Origin: Sminthopsis crassicaudata
Lineage: Eukaryota
Length of the DNA stretch: 64,000 bases
Direction of reading: 5' to 3'
NCBI RefSeq assembly: GCF_048593235.1
Contig: NC_133617.1
Coordinates: 669,332,958-669,396,957 of the forward strand
Of this stretch, positions 3,156-50,710 are shown piece after piece. Made by a program: the position numbers and the translations under genes. How positions within the stretch are numbered: position 1 is the first letter of the stretch; each line of letters begins with the position of its first letter. The notes under the pieces were generated by a model. That model ran no database searches and was not told the DNA's origin. It saw nothing but the letters and a program-made list of their open reading frames with translations.

Positions 3156-4533
3156 CTGCAGGGAGAGAGGAAGGAGAAAAATCACCGATTACATGGCTCC
3201 TATTCCTGAAGGAGCTAAAACTTACAAAGAGCTTTCTTCTCCAGGTAGATGATATCTGGCTATGATCATGCCCATTTTACAAACTGGGCCACTGTGGCTA
3301 AGAGGAGTGAAATGATTGGCTAAGGACACACCTAGATCTCCTGTCTCTAAAGCCTAGCATGTGCCACCAGGTATGCCACGCTGTCTCCTCTCTGGGAGCC
3401 ACAGAGCAAGGTCTGCAATCTCAAGTAGATGACCAGGGTCAGCAGTTACAGTGCCAAGGAGGGACAGAGGTTGATATTTTTTAAAATGTTGAAAAGTTTT
3501 CTAGATTTGTCCATAAAAAAGTTAATCTCTATTTAGAGCTGTAACTAGGGTAAGATAACCAGAGCTTTTCCCATGGTGCTGACATGGCAGGGGGCATATT
3601 TTTACTTTGTGACAGTGAAGAGATTACTATCCTTGTCATCACCACCTGCATTCCAGTCTCCTCATCTCTTAAATGAGGGGGTGGGACTCAAAGTGATTTC
3701 TAAAGCCTTCCTGGTTCAGTTTTAGGATCTCCTAATCAGGCCTGAGTTAATCCAGAGGTAGATTTGATGGTATCCAATGGTACCTTAGAGTTCATTTCCT
3801 TGAAATACTTGCTCTCCACATATCATTTTTCAACTTAATATATAGTGATATTTAAATTCAATTTTCCAAAAATAAGAGCTACATTGAAAATATTTTTAAA
3901 ATGATGATTGGGGAAATAAATTCATCTAGAAGCAGTGTGGTTTAACAGAAAAAACGCTGGACTTGGAAGCAAAAGATATGGTTTGCAATCTGGTTGCTCT
4001 CACAAACTAGCCATGTGACCCTGGGCAAATCCCTTTTCTGAGAGTGTTTCCTATTTTCTACAATAATTCACACTATCATATCCTGTGGCCACTTCAGCAG
4101 ACAAAATATCTCGGGGGAAAATAAAAGCTTATTTAGAACCTTAGAAATCACTGACTTAAAAAGACCCTCAAAGCACAGAACTAAGATCTGGAACAGAGAA
4201 ACAGAAAATGCCAGAGGGCCCAGGGGAATCGGTGGGTACAACCTTCTCCTTTTTATAGTTGGGAAAGCTGAGAACTGGAGGTAGATCAACTATACAGTAG
4301 AATAGCTTCATCTTTGTTGAATTTGCCAGAATAAACTAAAGGTATTACAAAAATAAATGTACCAAGGGTCAAAGATGTGGAGTAAGGGCACAGACTCTGG
4401 GCTTAAGTGTATTGGGGACAAGGATTAGAGCCTAGAGTTCAGTTCAAGTCAGGGTTCTAGGTTGGAGATTAGATTTCAGTAGTCAAGAGCAGACTGGAAG
4501 AAGAGAGTCTGAGAATCTGAGTTAAGAGCTCAC

Positions 4534-4646
4534 CAAACACTGGTCACAGTTCTGTCCAGTGACAAAACGTTTGCAATAGCAGTTACCACTGATGGAGTCA
4601 CAAGGAGTATCACCTGGGACTGTGCCCCGAGGATCACACCTGCAGG
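4534..4646 (-). CDS. LAMB2L: Laminin beta-2-like exon 11 ([37 protein letters not shown])
   Basis: AG/GTGAGC flanks, 113 nt. Confidence 0.95.
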
Positions 4647-5234
4647 CTAAAGAAGCAAAGATGGTGTCAAATGATGGAAAGGATGGTCTGGAGGGAAGAG
4701 GGAGAGATGGTCACAGAAGCTGATTTTGGGAACAGTCCTCAAGCTCAGAGAACTGGGCTTAAATTATAGTGTCCTGGGCTAGGATTCACAGAGTCCTAAG
4801 TTGGGGATCAGAGAGTTCCCAAAGCCAAAGGGTCATTTACACAGACAGCCTTTATGTGGCATCCAGCTAGTCATAGTGACTAGGTTTATAAGTTTGAAGG
4901 TACTAGGGATCAGGGGATTAAGAGGTCCTGGGGTCACGAGTCACAAAACCCTGGATTTAGAGACTACTCATATAGGATCCCTTGGGTCCAAATGGACTCA
5001 AGCCATAGAGACTGAGTATCTTGGATTGATAGATCTTGAAGTCTTGAGTTGTGTCAAGGGATTTAAGAGATATGGAAGTTGGGGCTTCCTAAAGCCAGGG
5101 TCACATTCTGGACCTCTCAGGTCAAGAGGTCACAAGATAGGCTTTGGGCTCCATGAAGTTCAGGCTCTAGCCATCAGATATCCAAAGTTAAGAGGCTTGG
5201 GATCCAAAGTCATGAAGTTTCTGGGATCACTCAC

Positions 5235-5414
5235 ACAAACAACCTTCAGGTAATGCTGGGCTCAGGCCATAATAACCAGGACGACAAGTGTCACAGCGAG
5301 GTCCCCACACGTGGGCTTTGCAGCGACACTGCCCAGAGAGGAGCCCTCGGACCTCATCTGTGTGTGTGTCACACAGACCCCCATCCAGGGTGCCTGAAGG
5401 ATCACAGTCACACG
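5235..5414 (-). CDS. LAMB2L: Laminin beta-2-like exon 10 (LE repeat: [14 protein letters not shown]...)
   Basis: AG/GTGAGT flanks, 180 nt. Confidence 0.95.
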
Positions 5415-5550
5415 CTGGGAACACAGAAGCAGAGTTGGAACAAGGGGTCAGAAATGACAGGTGAAGTCAAGAGGTGAGGATTGGAATGGGGTGGCAAATA
5501 CCAGGATTAGGTTCATGGCTGAGGGCAGGGCTCATCATCTAAGGACTTAC

Positions 5551-5739
5551 GTTTACAGGTGTATGGGGAGCGGGGGTCTTCTCGGGGGTCCCGATGGTAG
5601 AAGGGCCGGCAGATCTCACAATGCCTCCCAGCTGTGTGGTGCTGACATGCGTCACACACACCTCCACTCACGTTGCCCGAGGCCATAAAAACAGCCATGT
5701 CAAAGTGGCAACTCCTGGCATGCTGGTGGCATTCACACT
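5551..5739 (-). CDS. LAMB2L: Laminin beta-2-like exon 9 (LE repeat: [28 protein letters not shown]...)
   Basis: AG/GTAAGT flanks, 189 nt. Confidence 0.95.
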
Positions 5740-5829
5740 CTGGGGGAAAGAGAAGGGATGTGGTGGGTCAGAGATACCCAGAGCACAGCAAGGGCACGTG
5801 GGTTAGGGAAGGCAGTGAGCAGCACATAC

Positions 5830-5950
5830 CCCGGCAGGCATGAGCATTCCCAGGCTCGGCTGGGCGCCAGGGCTGGTCATGGAATAGGTCCTGGCAGCGC
5901 TCACAGTGGGGTCCAGCTGTCTGGTGCTGACAAACACAAAGCCCATGGAC
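5830..5950 (-). CDS. LAMB2L: Laminin beta-2-like exon 8 (LE repeat: [19 protein letters not shown]...)
   Basis: AG/GTATGT flanks, 121 nt. Confidence 0.95.
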
Positions 5951-6159
5951 CTACAAATGGCAGAGCTGGTAAGACTTTAGGAACACTGCCTCAGAGAGGC
6001 ACCCCCCCCAAGACCTGAAGGGGAGGGGAGGACCTCTGACCACCACAAGGACTCCAGACTCCGTCTTCCAGAAGCAATAGCCTTCTCCACAGCCACCCAC
6101 TAAAGGTGATTCCCCTCCTTTACTCCTGACACTCTCTGCCCTCAGAGACTTCCACTCAC

Positions 6160-6365
6160 CATGCCCTCCACACTTGGTGGGGCACCAGGGGCAGGCGCAC
6201 ACTCAGAGGCATGTCCATGGCAGAGGCAACTTCCTCGGACCACAAGCTCATACAAGGCGTAGTAGTAGTGAGGTCCGTGACGGTGGCCCCAGCCCCCTAG
6301 GGGCCCATCTCCCAGCGTGTGTAGTTTAGAGAAATTCACCCTCAGATTGGTAACTCGAAGCAGCT
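6160..6365 (-). CDS. LAMB2L: Laminin beta-2-like exon 7 ([19 protein letters not shown]...[14 protein letters not shown])
   Basis: AG/GTGAGT flanks, 206 nt; LN end and first LE Cys pattern. Confidence 0.95.
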
Positions 6366-7137
6366 CTGGGGAGAATGGGGTAGTAAAGGCAGGGAGGATG
6401 GAGACTTAAGGTTGGACAACCCCCTCTCAAGTATCCCTGTTTCCCCAATCCATCTTTCTCTCCAAGCCATCCTTCACACGTTTGCTAAAGTAATGCAGAA
6501 ATATGACTAGGTTATTGCCTTACTCAGAAACTTTCAAGTAACTACAGAATATCTGAGACCATTATCGTGTAAATGCAGCCTCCTGAACTCTAAATGCCTT
6601 AAGGTTCATAAATCACTTTAACACTCTACGAATATTAGCATTGCTATTTTATAGCTGAAGAGGCAACAATGTGGCTGATAGAGAACTGGCCAAGACAGCA
6701 GGGTTCCAGTCCTGTTTCGGACATCCTGGCTCATTCATTATAGTTGGAAAAGCCTGGGCAGATCCCTCAGTCCATCAGGGTTCTGGGACTCCCTGAAGCC
6801 CTTAGGCTGCATCTGGAGAGTGTCTTCAGCTGGGAGTACAGGACGAGAAAAAGAGGTTCAGAGAAGGCGAATCACTTGTCTTTGGCCACAGGCCTAATGA
6901 GAGGCAGTGCTAGCTAGTTCTTAGCCCGTTCAACGGACCTGGAGGCTTTCTTAGAATATGCTCTGATAAAGCCCAGCTCCTCACTAGAACAAACCAGGCT
7001 CAGTCTGGGCTCAAGTCCTTTGTTCTCCCTCTGGAATGCTTAGTTCCCCTGCTCCCTCCCCCAACCAAATCCCACACTTATTGATCATTCCAGAGGAAGC
7101 TTAACCCCTTAGCTAAAGAGACCAAGACAGACTCCCC

Positions 7138-13247: not shown

Positions 13248-14462
<1,215 letters not shown>

Positions 14463-19260: not shown

Positions 19261-22200
19261 GAGTGCCAACTTGTGAGGTCTTTCCTGACCCTAGTCCCAG
19301 AGCCAAGATCCTTGTCCCCTGAAAAAGCCAATGTACTTACTTTATATACACTTTATAGCACTCATATGTGCTCAGGTTATTTATTCCCATTTTAATATAA
19401 ACCTGTGGAAGGCCAGGGCTGTTTATTCTCATCTTTGTATCCCTAGCACAGCACCTAGCACAGTACTGGACACATAGTGGACATTAAATACTTGCTGAAT
19501 GGACCTGGGAAATAAAGAAGAAGGCAAAGTCAAAATTGATTCTCATTCATGAGAGTAAAGGAAGGTGCCATGGAAGGGTCAATGGCAATGTGGGCTGGGA
19601 TTAGAAAGAGTTTACAGCTTGAGGAGGAAGTTGCTTACCATCTGTCAAACCAAGAAAGTCCATGCCTGGAAGTATCTAGAAGGAAGAATGTAAGAGGAGT
19701 CAAGAGTTGACGGAATGGGAATGAGTCTGCATTTCTTTTGTAAGACAAGGGCTCAAGAGACTTCCATTACCACAAACCCGGGAGGTAGGTAGTATATGTA
19801 TTATCCCCGTTTTAATGATGAAGGAATTGATGGACTGAGAAAAATGACTTGCCTGTGGTCACATAGTCAAGTTTTAAATGCTTGTTTCCTTACTTCTGTT
19901 TCAATGTTCTTTCCATTAATGTACAGTTATTTCTATAGCTCAAATTTATCCTCTCTATATCCCTGTGAGATATGTAGCATAAGAACCAATATCCCCATGT
20001 GACAAAAAAAGAGGAGAGGCCCAAAGGTATGCCATCTCTCTAGCAGACTTTTTTGTCTCCCTTCCCCTAACTCAGGGGAAAGAGTTATCTCATTGGGTCA
20101 GATTTAGAGTTGAAAGGGGCCTCAGGAACCTTTCATCTTTTCTTTTTTTTTCCAAAAAGGAAACTAAGACCTACAGTGAGGCTACTTAGAGAATCAGGAC
20201 TTAAACCTGTAAGAAATATTAGAAAATTCAGTTCTGTTACTTAAAACCAGAGTGATTTCAGAAAAGTCACTTGACTCTCAGATTTTTTTCCCTTAGTAAA
20301 ATGAGAGGATTGTGCTGGATGATTTCTGAGAAAGAATATTAGTTACAAGGGCTCAAAGAATAATAAATTTAGATGTGAAAGGAGCATCAGAGATCATCTA
20401 GTTCACCTCCTTATTCTACAAATGAGGAAACTGAGGTCCAATGAAGTCAAGTAATTTGTACAAGATCTTGTATCGAACAAAGACCTGAGACCCAAATTCA
20501 GGGCTTCTGTCTCTTAGCTGTTTAGCATATCTCTTAAGTCCTAGGGCTTAGGTTTTCCAGAGTCTGGCCAAAGGAAGCGAATGTGAAATCAAGGCTTTCT
20601 TATTCTTAAGGACCCCAAATTTATTTAGAAAGTGAATGGAAAGATAAGACTCTTTCAACCCTGGAAGAAACTGAGAAGTAAGCTATTTTGGCACTCCAGC
20701 CTGGCAATGGGAGGGGCCCTTGGTCTAAGGCTACATTTTGCCTTTTCATCCCTCTTCGAGGATGGCATCCACGGAAACCACCACCCCATTCCTCCCAAAA
20801 GAAACAAAAGCCAAGAGAGCTACAATTCACCCCATCATTCATAGGTTCCCATTCAAAGAGAGGCATGTAAGCAGGAAACTGTCTTCTCAACCCAAACCTC
20901 TCATCCTCTTCCAGGGCAAATTCAGAGCCAGGGAGACAATCAAAGGGCAGGCCTTCCAAAACCTGGCAGGAAGCTCTGGGCCTGGGCTTGGTCCAAAATC
21001 CTTTGCAGAAGAACCTCCTTAGGCCCAGTGGTTGGGACAGTGGAATGGGACTGAGACTTTCTTTTTCATTAGCAAATAGGAAATGTTTCCAACTTCTGCA
21101 ACATCTCAGCCCTCAGGTGGCTTTATTACCATCCCGAAAAGTACCAGCATTCCTGGGGGCAAAGGGGATTCCAACTGAAGACTCCTGCCTGGGCCATGGG
21201 TGGAGTGGCTGACTTCTTCAGCACTGACCACAGACAGACACAGCTTCCAGAAGGGAAGGAAAGGGAATTTGTGTAATACCAATGCTCCCAGGGGCCTGAA
21301 GACCCAGGGACAGGAGCAACCTCCCCAGGTGCAACTAACTCATTAAAAGATCAGTAGCAGCTTAGTGCTGAGGGATCTCAGGCAGAGCCCTAACTAAGTA
21401 GTATTCCCTATGCACATCAACACCAGGAGCAGTCTTTCCAGCATACACATACACTTCCCATAGTCCTAATAGGCTCAGGTAGCAATTTGAAAACTCCTGG
21501 TAGATTATCTTATTCCCAGAAGCAGCAATTGTCACCTCTTTGTTTAGAAACATTCCTTTAGGCTCAAGAAGCATGAAGAAGAACCGTGGTAGTGACACCC
21601 CACCCCACCCCCACCCCCATTAAACCACAAACAATCTTTTTTTCCTTCACAGGACCTTAGCCCTTTATTGGATCTGAATTTGGAGGTGGAAAAAGGGAAG
21701 GTTTGGGGTCTTGGGACTTGGCTTGTGAAGGGTGAAAAGGAAGGAGTCTTGGGTTTGCACGGGGTGTTTTGTCTGCCTGACCTCTGAGCTGAGGGTCATC
21801 CCATACAGGCTCTCCTACACCAGCATTTTCTCACTGTAGCTGATTTGGAGAGGATCCTGCCTTTCCAGAAGCCTGGACTATCACAACAGACTTCATTCCA
21901 AAGGAACTAGACACTTCAAGGTGCCTAAGGCCTTTCAATTAGACCTGTATTTTCCCACAGCCTCGAGAAGAGAAGGGAATGGGCTTGAGGTGTGAACATG
22001 TGGGAGGGCACAGAGATAGGGGCCAAAAATAGATCAGAACCAGTGAAAGGATCAAAAGAATCCTAGAAGGTATAAACTGGGAGATTAAAAAAGCCCAGAT
22101 TTTGAGCTGGATAGGACCTTCAAACCCCTATACTGCACACATGGGAAAACTGAGGCTCAGAAAAAGGAAGTTACTTACTTGCCCAAGGTCACAGAGGCAC

Positions 22201-22519
22201 AACTGGGAGGTTTGGTAGACTGGGGAGAACTCCCTGGGATAAGGAAAACTCAAGAGAGACAGTGGATGCTCTGTAGGGCTTGGTGAGAAATTGGGGGAGG
22301 GGCTGGTTCAGAAAACCTACACGAGAAGTAAATGAGGAAAAGCCTGGCCCGCGTTGTTTTGTTATGCTTTGGTTTTGAGGGGGTGTGACCTTGATGAATA
22401 TATGGAGTACTGAGAGAAGAAACCTAAGAAATAGAGGGCCCCAAGACTGAGGCACAGGGAATAAGGCAGGAAGCTGGGAGAGCTGGACTGTACTAATAGA
22501 GCAGGTTAGAGAATGGCAA

Positions 22520-23100
22520 GGATGGGGATGAAGATAGAGATGGGGTGGGGATGGAGATGGGAGTGGGGGTGGGGATGGAGATGAGAAGATGGGGGTGGGG
22601 GTGAGGATAGAGATGGGGTGGGGATGGAGATGGGGGTGGGGATGGAGATGAGAAGATGGGGGTGGGGATGAGGATAGAGATGGGGTGGGGATGGAGATGG
22701 GGGTGGGGATGGAGATGAGAAGATGGGGGTGGGGATGAGGATAGAGATGGGGTGGGGATGGAGATGAGAAGATGGGGGTGGGGGTGAGGATAGAGATGGG
22801 GTGGGGATGGAGATGGGGGTGGGGATGAGGATAGAATAGAGGTAGGGAAGAGGGCTGGAGATGGGGGGTGGGGATGAAGATAAGAGTAGAGGTGGGGAAG
22901 ACGATTGGAGAGGGGGGTGGGGATGGGGTAAGAATGGGGTGGGAATGAGGAAGATAGAGACGAGGATGGGGATGGAGTAGGGGAAGAGGATGGGAGTGTG
23001 GTGGGGATGAAAATGAGAGAATAGGGATAAAGATGAGGGTGGGGGTGGGGATGAAGACGGGGATAGGAATGGGGATGAAGAAGATAAAAAGAACGAAGCC
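22520..23100 (+). repeat. G-rich degenerate tandem repeat (GGGGTGGGGAT(G)GAGAT units; ~67-bp higher-order unit)
   Basis: Visible periodicity of G4-5 runs. Confidence 0.9.
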
Positions 23101-23149
23101 AGGGGAGTCTGGGGCAGTGGAACAGTAAAATATGTTTAAGTGTGTATGA

Positions 23150-24500
23150 TCGGAGAGTCCCAGAGCTTCTAAGTATGGGGTCAGCAAGATCTCGGTCCTG
23201 GGGCACCTGGTACGTATGAGAACGGTGGGATACGGTGGATAAAGAAGGGGGTGGGAGGGGCAGGGAACCTGGGGGTCGTGGGGGTTTCGGGCGGCTGGGG
23301 CGGAAGGCCCGAAAAGATGTAAGAATGGGAAAATTCTGGGTGGGGAGCTATGACTGTGGAGAGACTTATGAAAGGGAGGGTGGTGGGTGCAAGGGGTAGC
23401 TTGGGTCGGGAAAGGGAGGGGAGGGCAGGGCAGGAGAGGGCGGGAGGGGGAGGATTGGAGTGGGGGAGGGGCTCCGAGGAGCCCCCCAGCCCCGCCCCCT
23501 CGGCGCTGCCTCCGGCCCGGCCCGGCAGACTGAGCCGCCGACGCCGCCGCCGACGCCGCCATGGCCAGGCCCCGGGCCCAGCGCCCCCTCTGGACGACCC
23601 GGGCCGGCTCGGCCCCGCGGGCCCAACACCTACCGGCCGCCGCCGCGGGGACCCGGGACCAGCCTCTGCGCCGCCTCCGCCGCTCCAACATGGCCGCCCC
23701 GCTGAGGGCCGGAAGTGCAGCTCCACTTCCGCTTCCGGCCCCCCCCCTCCTCAGAGCCCCCCTCCCAGACTGGGGACCCCCGGCCCCTCCCCTACCCCCA
23801 GGGTCTCCGCCCCCTAGGGTCTCCCGCGCCCCCACGTGGCGGTTGCTGGTCCTATTTTAGCTCTAGTCCAGTTCAACTAGACTTTGGGGAGACCACAGCC
23901 CTGCCCTCAGGGAGCCTCCAGTTTGGGGGAAAAACCCAGGCCTACCTTTCGGGAGCCTCCAGATTGGGAGAGAAACTCCGCTCTAAGGGCTGGAAGGTCT
24001 CGATCTGAGGAGGGGATTGAAGCCCGCCCTCAGGGAGCCTTTATGTGGGGGGGAATTACAGCTCCCCGCTGGGAGCTCTGGGGGCAGGAGAGGAAGCTCC
24101 TACCCTAATCCTTTTAAGACCGTCTGTCGGAGGGACACTCCCCTGGCCTAACTCCCGAGGACGACGTTGGGCGCAGTAGCGCCCTCATGACCCCGACAGC
24201 GCGGACCTCGAGCCCTCACGTGGCGCGAGGACACAGCAATCGAAGCACGTGTGGCTCGGATGGCCTCCCCCTATTATCTTTTTCCCCCTGAGTTTTCTTA
24301 ACCCCTCCCTCTGACCGCTCAAGTCTCCTTGCCAGAAAATCGCCCACAACAGCTCTGGTTGTCCCCCAGGCGCTGTACTGAACCCTTTTCTCCGAGACCC
24401 TTTTCCTGGCCATTGCATCAGCCGCCTTCCACGAGTTCTCGTTCTCGCGCATTCTTTGTGCACGTGACTTCTTCTACAAGCTAATACTCTGAGTTCCAAT
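23150..24500. promoter_or_regulatory. CpG-island promoter of CCDC71 (ETS CCGGAAGT/CACTTCCGCTTCCGG, YY1-like AACATGGC, four CACGTG E-boxes)
   Basis: High GC/CpG density; motifs read directly. Confidence 0.8.
23634..23730 (-). other. CCDC71: CCDC71 5' exon 1 (TSS approximate)
   Basis: CCG|GTAGGT donor inside a CpG island, next to ETS and YY1 motifs. Confidence 0.55.
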
Positions 24501-44796: not shown

Positions 44797-45338
44797 GTTG
44801 AAGAAGTTGAGGTGCGAAGAAATTGTGCCAAGTCACCCAGTTACCAAGCGTCTGAGGCAGGAGATGGACCCCTCCCCCACGCCTTTTCAATAATGCAAAA
44901 TCCAGTCATCTGACTATTCCGCAATATTGTCCACGAAGGATCTTAAATGATCATAATTTAGTGTAAAAAGAAAGGCCCTCGGGGTCATCTGGTGCGACCC
45001 TACGGTTCTGTAGATTGCTTGAAGTCGCGCAGTTAGCAATCAGCGGGACTTCCCGGGGATTAGCAGGCTCGAGGCCAGAGATTACATGGCTATAGGGGCA
45101 GACTTAAAGGTCAGTGAATCTAAAGACCCAGAGGAATAAGGCTGGGTTGGAGTTAGGGCTTTAAGGGCCTGGGGGGGAGGGGAGTGCCCAAACAACCTGG
45201 AGTCGCGAGGAGAGTTAGGAGAGTGTGGAGAGGGAGGGGTGGGGGTTGGGAGAAGCTTCCTCTAGGAGGGGGAGGAGTCAGCTGTAGTTCTTGCCCCGCC
45301 CCCAAGTCGCACTGGAGGAACTGGCCAGAGCCGCTCAC

Positions 45339-45351
45339 CAGGGGGCGCCAT
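45339..45351 (-). CDS. Unnamed 201-aa gene, exon 1 coding part (MAPP)
   Basis: ATGGCG followed by CTG|GTGAGC donor; phase 1 joins exon 2 in frame. Confidence 0.6.
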
Positions 45352-45885
45352 AAGATTGGGGCCGGAATGCAGACACTCTAGCCCAGGCCTGGCGGCCAGT
45401 TCCGGTGTCCGTAGTGCCGGCAACCTGTGGCCGGAAGCCAGGAGCCGGGACAGCGCTGCTAAGGCTACTTGCTAGGCGGGCACTGGGACTGACCGCCCGC
45501 CCACCCAGCTGTGGGGAGCCGCGACCTGGCGCTGGCATGCCTCCAGGCCCCGAGGCCGCCACTTGGTCCTTCTCCTCCCGAGATGTCACGGACTGCTGAG
45601 TCCTGACCTCCGGTTCCCCCCGGCCCAGGCAGCTCTCCCCTCAGCCAGTCAGGTTCTTTCTCTCCTGGAGCGACCCGGACTCCTCACGCCTCGGACAGCC
45701 CCTCCCCCGTTAGCCCGTCTCTTGCGGGCCACAGAGACCCCGTGCAGACTCCCTGCAGCCCCTTGCCGACTTTCCCTCTTTAACCCTCCCCCTGCACCTG
45801 AAATCCCGCTCCTTCCCTAATCCCCAACTCCTTCCCCTCCTTAATCGGTTTTCCCCAAGTCTCAGCCCCTCCCCTCTCGCAAGGC

Positions 45886-46273
45886 ATGAGCGCGGAGGAG
45901 CTGGATGCTTGCTCGGGGGACCCAGACCCGAGCCGGCCCCCCGGCCCCCCGGCGGTGGCTGCAGGCGCAGAGCAGGATGGGAAGGCAGAGAGCCTCGAGG
46001 CCCCGAGGAGGACTCCTTCACCCTCGGGGAGCCCGGGCCGGGAGGAGCCCGGGAAGCCCCTGGGCCCCCGTCCCGCTGGAGGCCCGGGAGCTGAGGGTCG
46101 GGACTCTCCTGGCTCCCCTGAACATCCCCTCCCCGTGAGAACCAAAAAACTGGTCCTTCACATGGACATAAACAACACCATCTTCGTGTCTGACAGCGCC
46201 ACGGGGGAGGGGCCCAAAGCCGCCCTCAGCTCCTACTTGAGCTCCGTGTGTTGGGGGCATTTCAACCAGGAGG
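45886..46273 (+). CDS. Uncharacterised HAD-superfamily protein (418 aa), exon 1 (low-complexity N-terminus, motif I LVLHMDINNTI)
   Basis: GGCATGA start, GAGG|GTAAGA donor, 388 nt. Confidence 0.88.
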
Positions 46274-47697
46274 GTAAGAAGCATCCCGGGCTCCGCACCG
46301 GTGCCAGGGGCCCAGTGGTCTTAGGCGGCCTCCAGTTACCCCCGAGGGTGAGGGAGGGGGCCGAGGAAGGAGAGGCGCGGGTGGTCTGGAAGGAAATGCT
46401 GAGATGTGACCTAGGCTCAAACCGTAGAACTTCGCCGAGCTTCAGGTTCTGTTTCTGTAAAGGGGATTTTTAACACAGGGTTTTGTAATGCTCATGTGCC
46501 CTTTTTATCCTTTCTTCTTCCTTGATGGTGCAAGTCTAAAGTGTCCTAACCCCCTCCCCACCCCCGGTTTCTCTGGAGACACTCTCCCTCTTCCCTGGAG
46601 CTGGGTGGAGCCCGTGGAAGATTCTGGGTAGAAGTGGTCAGTGGGTCACTCCCTGTGGTCTTGAGCACGTTGCTGTGCTGTGACTCAAGCAGTTGTTCTG
46701 GAAACTGGAGGGTTCATAGCGTTATGGATTAATTGGTTGCAGGGATCTGGGAAAGAAAGTCATCTTACTCCACCACAAAGGAGTCAAGTAGGCGAGGGGC
46801 CGAGCCCAAAGTCCCGCCGGGAGGGACAGTAGTAACTATCTAGTTACTAGGGAACTCGAACTAGGCAGTCTTACTGACTGGCCTTTTCTCCACTTCCTGT
46901 GCCACTTCCTCAGATTCCTCAGTTAAGAGCTCTAGGGACTTTGGGCAGATCCCTACTTTAGTGAACCTCAGTTTGTCACCTCTGTCTGGAAGGCTGATAA
47001 CAACCACTACTTAGGTCACTGGGCTGTTGTGCAGAAATCATTTTGTATAAAGGCAATTGCTGATGCAGTGGTTAGAGCCCTGGGCCTGAAGTCAGGAAGA
47101 CCAGAGTTCAAATCAGCCTCAGACACTATTTGACTCTGAGCAAATCATTTTGCTTCTGTCTGCCTCGGTTTCCTCTCTACAAATGGAGATAATTATAGTA
47201 TCCACCTTTTGGGGTTGTTAGGATCAAATGAGATAATATTTCTAAAGTGCTTCACAAACCCTAAAGAACCATAGAAATACAAACTATCATTCCAAAGTGA
47301 CATAGAAATGGCTGTTATTATTCCCCTCTCAAAATAAATGGCCCTGGAAAAATCACTTAAACTCCTAATATTCTGTGCAACCCTTTTAAATTTTGAAGAT
47401 GATTGATAAAGGGAGTTTCCTTGCCTGAAATTCTCTACATGGATGAAATCACAAATTTATGTAGGAAAAAAAATCTGTCTTCATCTCAGTTTTATTTTCT
47501 GGGAAATGAAGGACTTGCAGTAGATAGATAAATCTAGGAACGCACTTCTGATTACTGACTGATCACTGGGTTTGGAGGGCTAGCCACCATTGAGCTCCAT
47601 GTCTGAGGGGGGTTAGAGAAATCCCCTCCATGATTTTTGGCCACATTCCATGTCTCATCTACTACATACCCCAACTCTGGATTCCTTTCTCTTTCAG

Positions 47698-48083
47698 GTA
47701 AGTGGCAGTGGCTGAGTGAGCTCCCTTCATTGCTGCCCCCTACCCCTGATGCCAGCAGCTTCTCCTCAATTTTTGGCCGGCACACCAAGTTTATATCGAG
47801 TACGCTGGGCCACCCCTTCCAGTCACTCTTCTCCTCCTACTTGCAGCTGTTGGAGTGGCCTGGCCAGCCGAACTCAGTTTTCTCTGTCCTAGGGGAGGAT
47901 GGCCGTCATTACCACCGGGTGTTGCCAGCCTTTTTCAAATTACTGGCTGGTCTTTCTCAGCAGGGCCGCCGCTTTGCCATCATTTTCCGCACCTTTGGCA
48001 AAGACTTGACCTCACTACTTCAGACCACACACAGTGCCCTTCAAGGCCAGCACCCGCAGTTCTCAGCCTTGAAAGAGGTGATG
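47698..48083 (+). CDS. HAD-like protein exon 2 (GKWQWLSELPSL...motif II AIIFRTFG...)
   Basis: TTTCTCTTTCAG acceptor, ATG|GTGAGC donor, 386 nt open. Confidence 0.9.
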
Positions 48084-48251
48084 GTGAGCAATTCTCTTAA
48101 GGGAAACCAGAGTAGGAGCTCCTCTGGAGAGATTCAGCAGTCTAGTGACTGAAGAGCAGCCATTCTGTCTTAGAACTGGGGGGAAGGGAAGCAGGGGAGA
48201 TGGGTAACACTTGGGATGTGGGTGGGCCTCAACCCCTCCCTGTCCCTGCAG

Positions 48252-48412
48252 CTCCCTGTGGACCTGCGACCTGGAAAGATCCGCTGCAGTTCAAATAAGG
48301 TGATGGTCAGTCGAGGGAAAGAATCTGTGTCCAGTTGGCCAGATGCAAGAGTTGTGTATGACTACTTCAGTGCCATGGAAGGCCTGGGGGGCTTTCAGGA
48401 CCACTTTGCTTG
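48252..48412 (+). CDS. HAD-like protein exon 3 (LPVDLRPGKIRCS...GLGGFQDHFAW)
   Basis: CCCTGCAG acceptor, TG|GTAATA donor, 161 nt. Confidence 0.9.
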
Positions 48413-49101
48413 GTAATAACAATAACAACCCAAAAGAGTTATTTAGCACTATCCATTTATAAAGTACTTTGCTCACAAAGCCTTAGAAGATAGGCAGTGC
48501 AAGTATTATTTTCAGCGTTTTACAGATGAAAATAAAGACTCAAAGAGAAGTAATTTGTTCAGTGTAACAGAACCAGTAAGTGGTAGAGCCCAATTTCAAA
48601 CCTCTGTTCTGGGCCTTCCAGATTTCTTTCTGTCCCCCTCTCTTCCCCTCTCCTCCCCCCCGCCCCCCGTTTCCCCATCCCCCTGAAAGCTACCCAGGAC
48701 CAAAGAAGGTAACTAGTAATCCAGTTTCTCCATAGAGCCCATTTTGGGCATCCATCCCCTCCAAAATACCTTGTCAGTATTATCCCCTCCATGAATGAAG
48801 CCTTCCCTGAACTCTTGGTGCATTGTAATTACTTAATATTTATTGTCTTGGCTTTGTGATTTGATGTCAGCAACTCTCATGCTAGATAGTCCAAACAGTA
48901 AAAGCTTATTTTGTGTCCTGTGGCTGATGGTCCTACCTTTGGATTGGATTTGGGTGAACCCAAGTAGAACTTTCATACTAGCTCACCTATCACTGGCATA
49001 AAGCCAGTTGGGATAGTGCTAATCTGAAGCTCCACCTAAGGACATTATGAGTTCCATGATTATCTCCCCTACAATATCCTCCATTTTCCCTTTCTCTCTA
49101 G

Positions 49102-49234
49102 GTGGTCCAGGAACAATTTCTCCAGTCAAGGTGGCAAGCCACTGTGGGTTGATCCCCATGATCCTGAAGTCCAACACATCTGTTTTGATGATAACATTCG
49201 ACTACAGGATAGGGAGAGCATCATCCACCCTCAG
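49102..49234 (+). CDS. HAD-like protein exon 4 (motif III GGKPLW, motif IV ICFDDNI)
   Basis: TTTCTCTCTAG acceptor, CAG|GTACAA donor, 133 nt. Confidence 0.9.
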
Positions 49235-50521
49235 GTACAAATAGAATGGAATATTGGGAGGGAGAGGAGATAGCCTTTATCTCACAGAGACATAGGGGCT
49301 TGGAGGCAGGAAAACTTGAATTCAAACCCACACTTCAGCCTCACACTTAGCTATGTGATCCTGGGTCAAGTTGAGTCAATAAGTCAACCAAAATTCACTT
49401 TTTAAGAAATGTTATTTCATTTTCAATTCTGAATTTTCCCTTTACTCCCACTCTCCCACACATTGAGGAGGCAAGAAAAACAAAACTCATTACAAATATA
49501 TGTAACCAAAGCTTTTTTTTACTAAAGTCCTTACTGTAGGTCAGACACTACTAAGTGCTAGGGGCATAAAGAAAGGCAAAAAATATCCCTGCTTTTAAGT
49601 GGCTCATACTTTAATGGAGGAAGCAACATGGGAACAACTGTGTGTAGAAATCAGATGTATTAGACATAATATTAAAGGAAAGTCACTAAAATTAAGGAGA
49701 ATCAAGAAAAGCTTTTTGCAGAAGATGGGTCATGAGGCTGAAATAAGGAGAGTTGTAAGGATGGAGCCCAGTCATTTAAAATGCTAAAATTTATACACTT
49801 GAGATGGAGAATTATTTGTGAGGAACAGTAAGGAGATCACTTGTTTTTGTGTTTTAAATAGTATTTTATTTTTTTCTATTTACATATAAAATCAATTTTT
49901 AACATTTAAAAATTTTTTTCAGTTCCAATTTTTTTCTCTCCCTTGCCTTCCCCTTCCCTGGGACAATAAAGTCATTTGATGTATGTCTTATGTTTAATCA
50001 TGTAAAACATTAAAAAGATTAGTCACTGGGTTCAGAGTATGTAGAAAGAAGTAAAGATATAATAAGACTGAAGAGGTAGGAGAGGTCCAGGTTAGAAAGC
50101 TTTAAAAGCCAAGCAGTGGATTTTATATTTGATCCTGAAGGTAGTAAGTCACTAGTAGATCTCTCTCAGCTTGTTTCTTCATCCATAAAATGAGGGAATT
50201 AGGCTTTTTTGCTTTCCTTCCAGCTTGAATTCAGTGATCCTATGAATGGAATCAACCTGAGTTCTTAACCCATCATAAAATTTGGGCCTGCCAAAAGTTA
50301 GTTATGCTAGGATTAGGTTGATTTCCAAGCCTCTGTCAGCATTGGCCTCTTTGGAAGGAACTGAAGATTGGAGTCTTCCCTGGTGGCTAAAGAATGGATG
50401 TGATTTTGTGCAGCATATTGCTGGGCAGAGACCCTCTTCCGAGTCTCATACAGAGATACCACTATATTCTATCCCCACGAGGTCTGTTTATGTGTGTATC
50501 CTATTATATTCTCGGCTACAG

Positions 50522-50710
50522 GTGTTTATGGGACAGGGAGGACAAGAATACTGTACAGTCCCTACCTCTGAACTCTACGGCATCTGCCTAGTGCAAAACG
50601 ATCTCCTTCAGGCCATTGCCAATCCTGACTACTTCTTGATGACTGTGAGCCAGTGTGAGGATCGGTATGACCAATACTTGTCAAAGGTCCAGGCAGACAA
50701 TGGCTATTGA
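50522..50710 (+). CDS. HAD-like protein last exon (VFMGQGG...LVQNDLLQAIANPDYF...GY*)
   Basis: CTACAG acceptor, phase 0, open to TGA; total CDS 1257 nt. Confidence 0.88.
   Translation: MFMGQGGQEYCTVPTSELYGICLVQNDLLQAIANPDYFLMTVSQCEDRYDQYLSKVQADNGY

What the first reader, a model, noticed from the sequence alone, without database searches (positions are those of the whole stretch)
45886..50710. Unnamed HAD-superfamily protein with a non-canonical DxNxT motif I
Seen: a 418-aa product with HAD motifs in the correct order: I hhhDINNT (46165-46179), II hhhhRTFG, III GKP, IV hhhDDN (49187-49192). Known: canonical HAD phosphatases have DxDx(T/V), where the second Asp is the general acid/base; Asp to Asn there slows turnover of the phospho-aspartate intermediate. 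From memory it resembles teleost si:dkey-32e6.3-type and protist proteins with the same DxN, and I know of no human counterpart. Inference: an ancient enzyme with unusual chemistry (or a substrate-binding pseudophosphatase) lost in the human lineage.
Basis: partly seen in the sequence, partly recalled or inferred. Interest (0 to 1): 0.8.

Follow-up and report, generated by a model that had tools for sequence, protein, structure and literature searches.

The report
Orphan HAD-fold gene absent from placentals
This is a real, expressed dunnart gene for an unstudied, very old protein family that has the shape and most of the active-site residues of a HAD phosphatase but never the usual second catalytic aspartate, and no placental mammal, humans included, turned up with a copy.

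Summary
A five-exon GT-AG gene on the + strand (45886-50710) encodes 418 aa. RNA-run contigs from three runs carry all four splice junctions. It is Sminthopsis crassicaudata LOC141551530, the orthologue of teleost si:dkey-32e6.3.

Listed orthologues come from marsupials, monotremes, birds, reptiles, a ray and bony fish. None is placental, and no human Swiss-Prot model resembles it. The gene lies between CCDC71 and KLHDC8B, as it does in chicken.

The nucleophile Asp94, Thr98, Thr228, Lys324 and Asp341-Asp342-Asn343 are invariant or nearly so. They sit at the strand ends expected for HAD motifs. In 298 family members the residue two after the nucleophile is Asn (181), Arg (115) or Gln (2), never Asp.

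My best reading is a catalytically competent Mg-dependent phospho-aspartyl enzyme with non-canonical acid/base chemistry. A pseudophosphatase is the main rival. Biochemistry is untested, and I found no literature on the family.

The parts
45000..46500 (.). GC-rich, moderately CpG-rich promoter and first-exon region
Evidence: GC 0.61-0.68 and CpG observed/expected 0.52-0.58, against 0.0-0.3 in the introns.
45886..46273 (+). Exon 1: ATG, about 88 aa of Pro/Gly/Ser-rich N-terminus, strand S1 and motif I
   Evidence: The junction 46273|47698 is in three RNA runs.
46165..46179 (+). Motif I, D94-I-N96-N-T98: nucleophile Asp, Asn at +2, Thr at +4
   Evidence: D is the last residue of the first strand of the model. 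D is kept in 70 of 72 and T in 70 of 72 aligned sequences.
47698..48083 (+). Exon 2: large insert after motif I, then strand S2 with motif II. An alternative donor at 48077 gives the 416-aa isoform.
47988..48005 (+). Motif II, R227-T228-F-G230-K-D232
   Evidence: T is the last residue of strand 139-145 of the model. R 74/75, T 73/75, G 75/75, D 74/75.
48252..48412 (+). Exon 3: three-stranded insert between motifs II and III, then strand S3 with the conserved D308
49102..49234 (+). Exon 4: motif III and motif IV
49130..49141 (+). Motif III, G-G-K324-P
   Evidence: K is invariant, 75/75.
49187..49195 (+). Motif IV, D341-D342-N343
   Evidence: All three are invariant, 75/75. The first D is the last residue of strand 250-256 of the model.
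50522..50710 (+). Exon 5: last strands, long C-terminal helix, stop codon TGA

Best explanation
The locus is a functional, spliced dunnart gene (LOC141551530). It belongs to an ancient, uncharacterised eukaryotic family seen in vertebrates other than placentals, in spiralian invertebrates and in protists.

The protein is a divergent HAD-superfamily domain of about 330 aa. It has a long insert of about 125 aa between motifs I and II and a second of about 55 aa between motifs II and III. A disordered, proline-rich N-terminus precedes the domain.

Shown here:
- The gene model and its transcription.
- The fold neighbourhood.
- Invariance of the nucleophile Asp, the phosphate-binding Thr and Lys, and the Mg-binding Asp-Asp.
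- The complete absence of Asp at the +2 position across the family.

Inferred: the site still binds Mg2+ and a phosphoryl group and forms a phospho-aspartate. The Asn (Arg in Spiralia) at +2 cannot shuttle protons. The enzyme would therefore either act on substrates whose leaving group needs no protonation (phosphoanhydrides such as nucleotides or pyrophosphate, or acyl phosphates), or hold a long-lived phospho-enzyme whose hydrolysis is helped by another conserved acidic residue (Asp103, Asp232 or Asp308).

No placental copy was found, so the gene was probably lost before the placental radiation.
For: Gene and transcripts.

Family and phyletic range.

Fold:
- AlphaFold model with pLDDT 96.1 and pTM 0.93.
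- The nearest non-family shapes in the ESM Atlas are NIF, DUF2608 and HAD hydrolase.
- The nearest named clusters by language-model features outside the family's own are mainly HAD families.

Motifs: they lie at the C-terminal ends of strands 5-11, 139-145 and 250-256. K324, D341, D342 and N343 are invariant and D94, T98, R227 and T228 are at least 90% conserved.

The +2 residue: N 181, R 115, Q 2, D 0 among 298 members. Arg forms one clade (support 96/85) and Asn occupies all the others.

Nucleotide hint: a fusion to adenylate kinase in two related proteins whose nearest named relatives are dinoflagellate, and to Dpy-30 in two ciliate clusters.

Absence from placentals and synteny.
Against: - No sequence model links the family to HAD. 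Pfam, NCBIfam and PHROGs at E up to 1-10 on all 75 members, an A1 profile against PDB, and hhalign against E. coli GmhB were all negative.
- Foldseek finds nothing significant outside the family.
- I had no model coordinates, so active-site geometry and the squiggle/flap elements could not be checked.
- Engineered Asp-to-Asn changes at +2 are what crystallographers use to trap HAD enzymes (entry titles; PMC12657724). A natural DxNxT NIF protein in fungi has been classed as a pseudophosphatase (PMC13216928).
- No activity data exist.
- The fusion hints are few and indirect.
Confidence: 0.55

Rival explanations
1. Pseudophosphatase. The HAD-like pocket binds a phosphorylated ligand or Mg-phosphate but does not turn it over, so the protein acts as a sensor, adaptor or sequestering module.
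For: The general acid/base Asp at +2 is missing in all 298 members examined. Engineered Asp-to-Asn variants are used to trap HAD enzymes (entry titles; PMC12657724). A natural DxNxT NIF protein in fungi was classed as a pseudophosphatase (PMC13216928).
Against: Every other catalytic residue (nucleophile Asp, Thr, Lys, Asp-Asp) is invariant or nearly so from vertebrates to dinoflagellates. Simple ligand binding would not require that. From general knowledge, P-type ATPases also lack Asp at +2 and are active.
Confidence: 0.27
2. HAD-fold enzyme with chemistry that is not phosphoryl transfer, for example attack of Asp94 on carbon as in haloacid dehalogenases, or another hydrolytic reaction.
For: The HAD superfamily contains such branches, and they also lack Asp at +2 (general knowledge). 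A 2-haloacid dehalogenase and a phosphonatase-like protein are among the fold neighbours.
Against: The invariant Asp-Asp of motif IV and the conserved Thr and Lys are the Mg/phosphate-binding set. From general knowledge, dehalogenases do not need the Mg-binding pair.
Confidence: 0.08
3. Not a HAD relative at all: a generic Rossmann-like alpha/beta protein in which four short motifs mimic the HAD order by chance.
Against: HAD proteins make up 40 of 50 and 50 of 50 of the best structural matches, although by my rough estimate they are only about one percent of PDB clusters. MDP-1 is covered almost end to end. The motifs sit exactly at the strand ends where HAD motifs lie and are the most conserved columns of the family. 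Two other methods, Atlas shape and language-model features, also return HAD families.
Confidence: 0.05

Closest known systems
Magnesium-dependent phosphatase 1 (MDP-1; Pfam Acid_PPase PF12689)
   Different: MDP-1 is a capless protein of about 165 aa with the canonical DxDxT. This protein has about 180 aa of inserts, a C-terminal helix and DxNxT. No member matches PF12689 even at E 10.
FCP1/SCP CTD phosphatases and relatives (NIF domain PF03031: Fcp1, Scp1, CTDNEP1, UBLCP1, TIM50)
   Different: No Pfam NIF match. The inserts differ. The +2 residue is Asn/Arg rather than Asp. TIM50, the family's pseudophosphatase, has also lost the nucleophile (general knowledge), unlike this family.
Phosphorylation (P) domain of P-type ATPases
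   Different: This is a soluble single-domain protein with no membrane, N or A domains. Motif IV is DD, not GDGxND. There is no sequence similarity.
Fungal NIF-domain protein with a natural DXNXT motif (PMC13216928)
   Same: A naturally occurring DxNxT in a HAD-fold protein, read there as a pseudophosphatase.
   Different: That protein is a recognisable NIF-domain member, while this family matches no Pfam model. Here DxN/R is fixed across a whole ancient family with all other catalytic residues intact.

Membership tests
HAD superfamily (Pfam clan CL0137) | Rossmannoid alpha/beta core resembling solved HAD structures | tested here: met
HAD superfamily (Pfam clan CL0137) | Squiggle and beta-hairpin flap directly after strand S1 | tested here: inconclusive
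   DSSP shows only isolated bridge residues at model positions 13-25.
HAD superfamily (Pfam clan CL0137) | Motif I: nucleophile Asp at the end of S1, followed by Thr/Val at +4 | tested here: met
   hhhhD94-I-N-N-T98. D is the last residue of strand 5-11. D 70/72 and T 70/72.
HAD superfamily (Pfam clan CL0137) | Motif I: second Asp at +2 (general acid/base of phosphatases and mutases) | tested here: not met
   Asn96 here. Across the family: N 181, R 115, Q 2, D 0. From general knowledge this is not universal in the superfamily, since P-type ATPases, dehalogenases and phosphonatase lack it.
HAD superfamily (Pfam clan CL0137) | Motif II: Ser/Thr at the end of S2 | tested here: met
   T228 ends strand 139-145. 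T 73/75, S 2/75.
HAD superfamily (Pfam clan CL0137) | Motif III Lys and motif IV acidic pair (DD) at the end of S4 | tested here: met
   K324, D341 and D342 are invariant, 75/75. D341 ends strand 250-256.
HAD superfamily (Pfam clan CL0137) | Significant match to a HAD sequence model | tested here: not met
   No HAD family in Pfam or NCBIfam for any of 75 members at E up to 10. The A1 profile against PDB gave no HAD hit. hhalign against E. coli GmhB gave probability 0.6%.
HAD superfamily (Pfam clan CL0137) | Mg2+-dependent phosphoryl transfer through a phospho-aspartate | not testable with these tools
   Needs biochemistry.
si:dkey-32e6.3 / LOC141551530 family (unnamed, no Pfam entry) | Full-length orthology with signature D-h-[N/R/Q]-x-T ... 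R-T-[FY]-G-x-D ... G-K-P ... F-D-D-N | tested here: met
   P0001 is 100% identical apart from the two-residue splice variant. Identity is 77-83% to other marsupials and 47-64% to monotreme, sauropsid and fish orthologues. The tree follows the species tree. Synteny matches chicken.
MDP-1 (PF12689) and NIF/FCP1 (PF03031) families | Match to the family model above its threshold | tested here: not met
   No hit at E up to 10. The resemblance is structural only.

The most novel reading that the evidence does not exclude
The family is a HAD branch that has replaced the proton-shuttling Asp with a hydrogen-bond or charge donor (Asn, or Arg in Spiralia). This would clamp an anionic leaving group, so that the protein works on adenine nucleotides or other phosphoanhydrides. 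It could be an ATP/ADP-driven, self-phosphorylating switch or a nucleotide phosphohydrolase coupled to adenylate-kinase systems. Independent fusions to adenylate kinase (in proteins nearest to dinoflagellate ones) and to the Dpy-30 docking domain (in ciliates) hint at this.
Probability: 0.15. Interest if true: 0.75.

Novelty: new variant of a known kind. Interest (0 to 1): 0.55.

Why it matters
HAD enzymes are among the best understood phosphotransferases, and the Asp at +2 is central to the textbook mechanism. This eukaryote-wide family keeps every other catalytic residue, has never used that Asp, has no Pfam model, and I found no paper on it. It is a natural experiment on how the fold works without its acid/base.

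It is also a clean case of a conserved vertebrate gene apparently missing from placentals. The syntenic slot is defined (CCDC71 to KLHDC8B). Zebrafish, chicken and marsupial models could show what function placentals dispensed with or replaced.

Tried and rejected
- Pfam on the five exon peptides and on full-length members: nothing.
- Pfam, NCBIfam and PHROGs on all 75 aligned members at permissive E: only scattered chance hits, no HAD family.
- phmmer of exon 2 and an hmmsearch of the family profile against PDB sequences: chance hits only, cytoglobin and xylanase.
- Foldseek against PDB, AFDB Swiss-Prot and AFDB clusters: significant only for the family's own clusters, then a cliff to E above 0.01.
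- hhalign of the family profile against the single E. coli GmhB sequence: no signal. I did not build deep HAD-family profiles because no seed sequences for MDP-1 or NIF were available from a tool.
- Literature searches for the gene symbols, LOC ids, and Dpy-30 + HAD + radial spoke: zero papers.
- Cluster look-ups of short high-scoring fragments, to find placental or amphibian copies: mostly unnamed run-derived ORFs, uninformative.
- A strictly ciliary role: rejected as a firm claim. From memory of the accession prefixes, members also occur in organisms without cilia (a pennate diatom, Capsaspora).
- The USP19 fusion in P0008: I read it as a read-through gene model, not a true architecture.
Full report
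**Observation.** The region 45886-50710 holds a five-exon gene on the + strand. Joining 45886-46273, 47698-48083, 48252-48412, 49102-49234 and 50522-50710 gives 1257 nt, which is 418 codons plus TGA. Every intron is GT-AG.

Contigs of three RNA runs carry all four junctions at word depths of about 11-19. One run also shows a minor donor six bases upstream, at 48077. That donor produces the 416-aa isoform held in the protein databases, which lacks Val-Met. Homologues have two residues at that point, so the 418-aa form is the conserved one.

- DINNT is residues 94-98 (46165-46179).
- RTFG is residues 227-230.
- GGKP is residues 322-325.
- FDDN is residues 340-343, with Asp-Asp at 49187-49192.

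The 5' end lies in a GC-rich, moderately CpG-rich stretch.

**Identity and distribution.** An exhaustive phmmer search with exon 2 found 313 cluster representatives at E up to 0.001. The full-length match, P0001, is 'uncharacterized protein LOC141551530 isoform X2 [Sminthopsis crassicaudata]'.

The 120 listed relatives all have E below 1e-99. They come from other marsupials (77-83% identity), platypus and echidna, birds, lizards, turtles, a ray, sturgeon, gar and many teleosts, where the name is si:dkey-32e6.3. No placental mammal and no amphibian is among them. An intact placental orthologue should score at least as well as the bird proteins, so its absence is meaningful.

A Foldseek search of all Swiss-Prot AlphaFold models, which include the human proteome, found nothing significant. 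The best human entry is PHOSPHO1 at E 0.17.

More distant members come from several groups:
- Annelids, molluscs, a brachiopod and a bryozoan.
- Dinoflagellates and bolidophytes.
- A cryptophyte and Symbiodinium.

All carry only 'hypothetical' or 'uncharacterized' names. Full-text searches for the gene symbols found no paper.

**Synteny.** In the window the gene lies between a CCDC71 ORF on the minus strand (13248-14462; Pfam CCDC71L, E 1e-147) and a kelch exon of KLHDC8B type (60706-61110). The chicken orthologue sits in the same slot: CCDC71 (-), the gene (+), a kelch gene (+), then IHO1 (+).

From memory, human CCDC71 and KLHDC8B are direct neighbours on 3p21.31. I could not check the human interval.

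**Fold.** No sequence model recognises the protein. Pfam, NCBIfam and PHROGs on all 75 aligned members at permissive thresholds, and the family profile against PDB sequences, returned no HAD family.

An AlphaFold model built on the 75-sequence alignment is very confident (pLDDT 96.1, pTM 0.93). Foldseek finds significant matches only to the family's own AlphaFold DB clusters, and E then jumps above 0.01.

- In the re-aligned Foldseek list all 50 are HAD proteins. MDP-1 is covered over 143-149 of its 162-164 residues.
- The ESM Atlas shape search gives a cluster partly annotated NIF, then DUF2608 and a HAD hydrolase, as the nearest non-family shapes.
- Language-model features give mainly HAD families (NIF, HAD_SAK, DUF2608, Acid_phosphat_B) as the nearest named clusters outside the family's own.

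**Active site.** In the model, Asp94 is the last residue of the first strand. Thr228 is the last residue of strand 139-145. Asp341 is the last residue of strand 250-256, and Lys324 lies 17 residues before it. These are the positions of HAD motifs I, II, IV and III.

Across the 75 sequences, Lys324, Asp341, Asp342 and Asn343 are invariant. Asp94, Thr98, Asp103, Arg227, Thr228 and Asp232 are at least 90% conserved.

The +2 residue is Asn in 181, Arg in 115 and Gln in 2 of 298 members with recognisable motifs. It is never Asp. On a maximum-likelihood tree the Arg form is a single clade (support 96/85). The named proteins that carry Arg are all spiralian. Asn is present in every other clade. Asn is therefore the likely original state of the family, not a recent substitution.

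About 125 residues are inserted between motifs I and II and about 55 between motifs II and III. The domain ends in a long helix.

**Mechanism.** The gene, the fold neighbourhood and the conservation pattern are shown. The rest is inferred.

A site that keeps the nucleophile, the phosphate-binding Thr and Lys and the Mg-binding Asp pair under long-term selection is probably still doing phosphoryl chemistry. Without a proton shuttle at +2 there are two plausible routes:
- Substrates whose leaving group needs no protonation, such as phosphoanhydrides or acyl phosphates.
- A long-lived phospho-enzyme, resolved by another conserved acid.

P-type ATPases, among the closest structural neighbours, work in this way with Thr at +2 (general knowledge).

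Two fusions hint at adenine nucleotides. Two related proteins, whose nearest named relatives are dinoflagellate, carry a C-terminal adenylate kinase domain. Two ciliate clusters carry a Dpy-30 docking domain. These hints are weak.

The main rival is a pseudophosphatase. Engineered Asp-to-Asn variants at +2 are used to trap HAD enzymes (PDB entry titles; PMC12657724). A natural DXNXT NIF protein in fungi has been called a pseudophosphatase (PMC13216928).

The family is a new variant of a known kind: a HAD-fold family with no sequence-model coverage, no literature that I could find, and a fixed non-Asp residue at +2.

My interest is moderate. The mechanism question is testable and the apparent loss in placentals is clean, but nothing here overturns current understanding until biochemistry is done.

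Noticed in passing
window 46969-47135 (intron 1); similar sequence near 49290-49370: A short element inside intron 1 has word depth of about 3,200-7,000 in two RNA runs, against about 10 in the flanks, with many contigs running off into unrelated sequence. This looks like a highly repeated, transcribed SINE-like element.
   Followed up: no
window 48077 / 48083: Two alternative GT donors six bases apart give the 416-aa and 418-aa isoforms. The database protein uses the minor one. Minor exon-skipping joints (46273 to 47964, and 48083 to 49102) also appear in single runs.
   Followed up: partly
window 13248-14462 (-) and 60706-61110 (+): There is a single-exon CCDC71 ORF (Pfam CCDC71L, E 1e-147) and a kelch exon of KLHDC8B type.
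   Followed up: partly
window 22189-23835 (-): A 548-aa ORF made largely of Pro/His/Leu/Ser repeats (PHPHLHPHP...) lies in a GC-rich stretch. It may be a low-complexity repeat or a CpG-island artefact rather than a gene.
   Followed up: no
P0008 (1438 aa): One database protein joins a USP19-type ubiquitin hydrolase to this family's domain at residues 1154-1277. This is probably a read-through gene model. From memory, USP19 lies in the same human 3p21.31 neighbourhood.
   Followed up: no
L003 (chicken run contig): An 8.2-kb run-derived contig carries CCDC71 and the 345-aa chicken orthologue as one uninterrupted ORF. The genomic copy (L002) spans 3.7 kb with introns, so this looks like a mixed spliced/unspliced assembly.
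   Followed up: no
P0129, P0275 and ciliate Atlas clusters: The family domain is fused to adenylate kinase in two proteins nearest to dinoflagellate ones, and to Dpy-30 in two ciliate clusters of 53 and 56 members (96% and 100% of members).
   Followed up: partly
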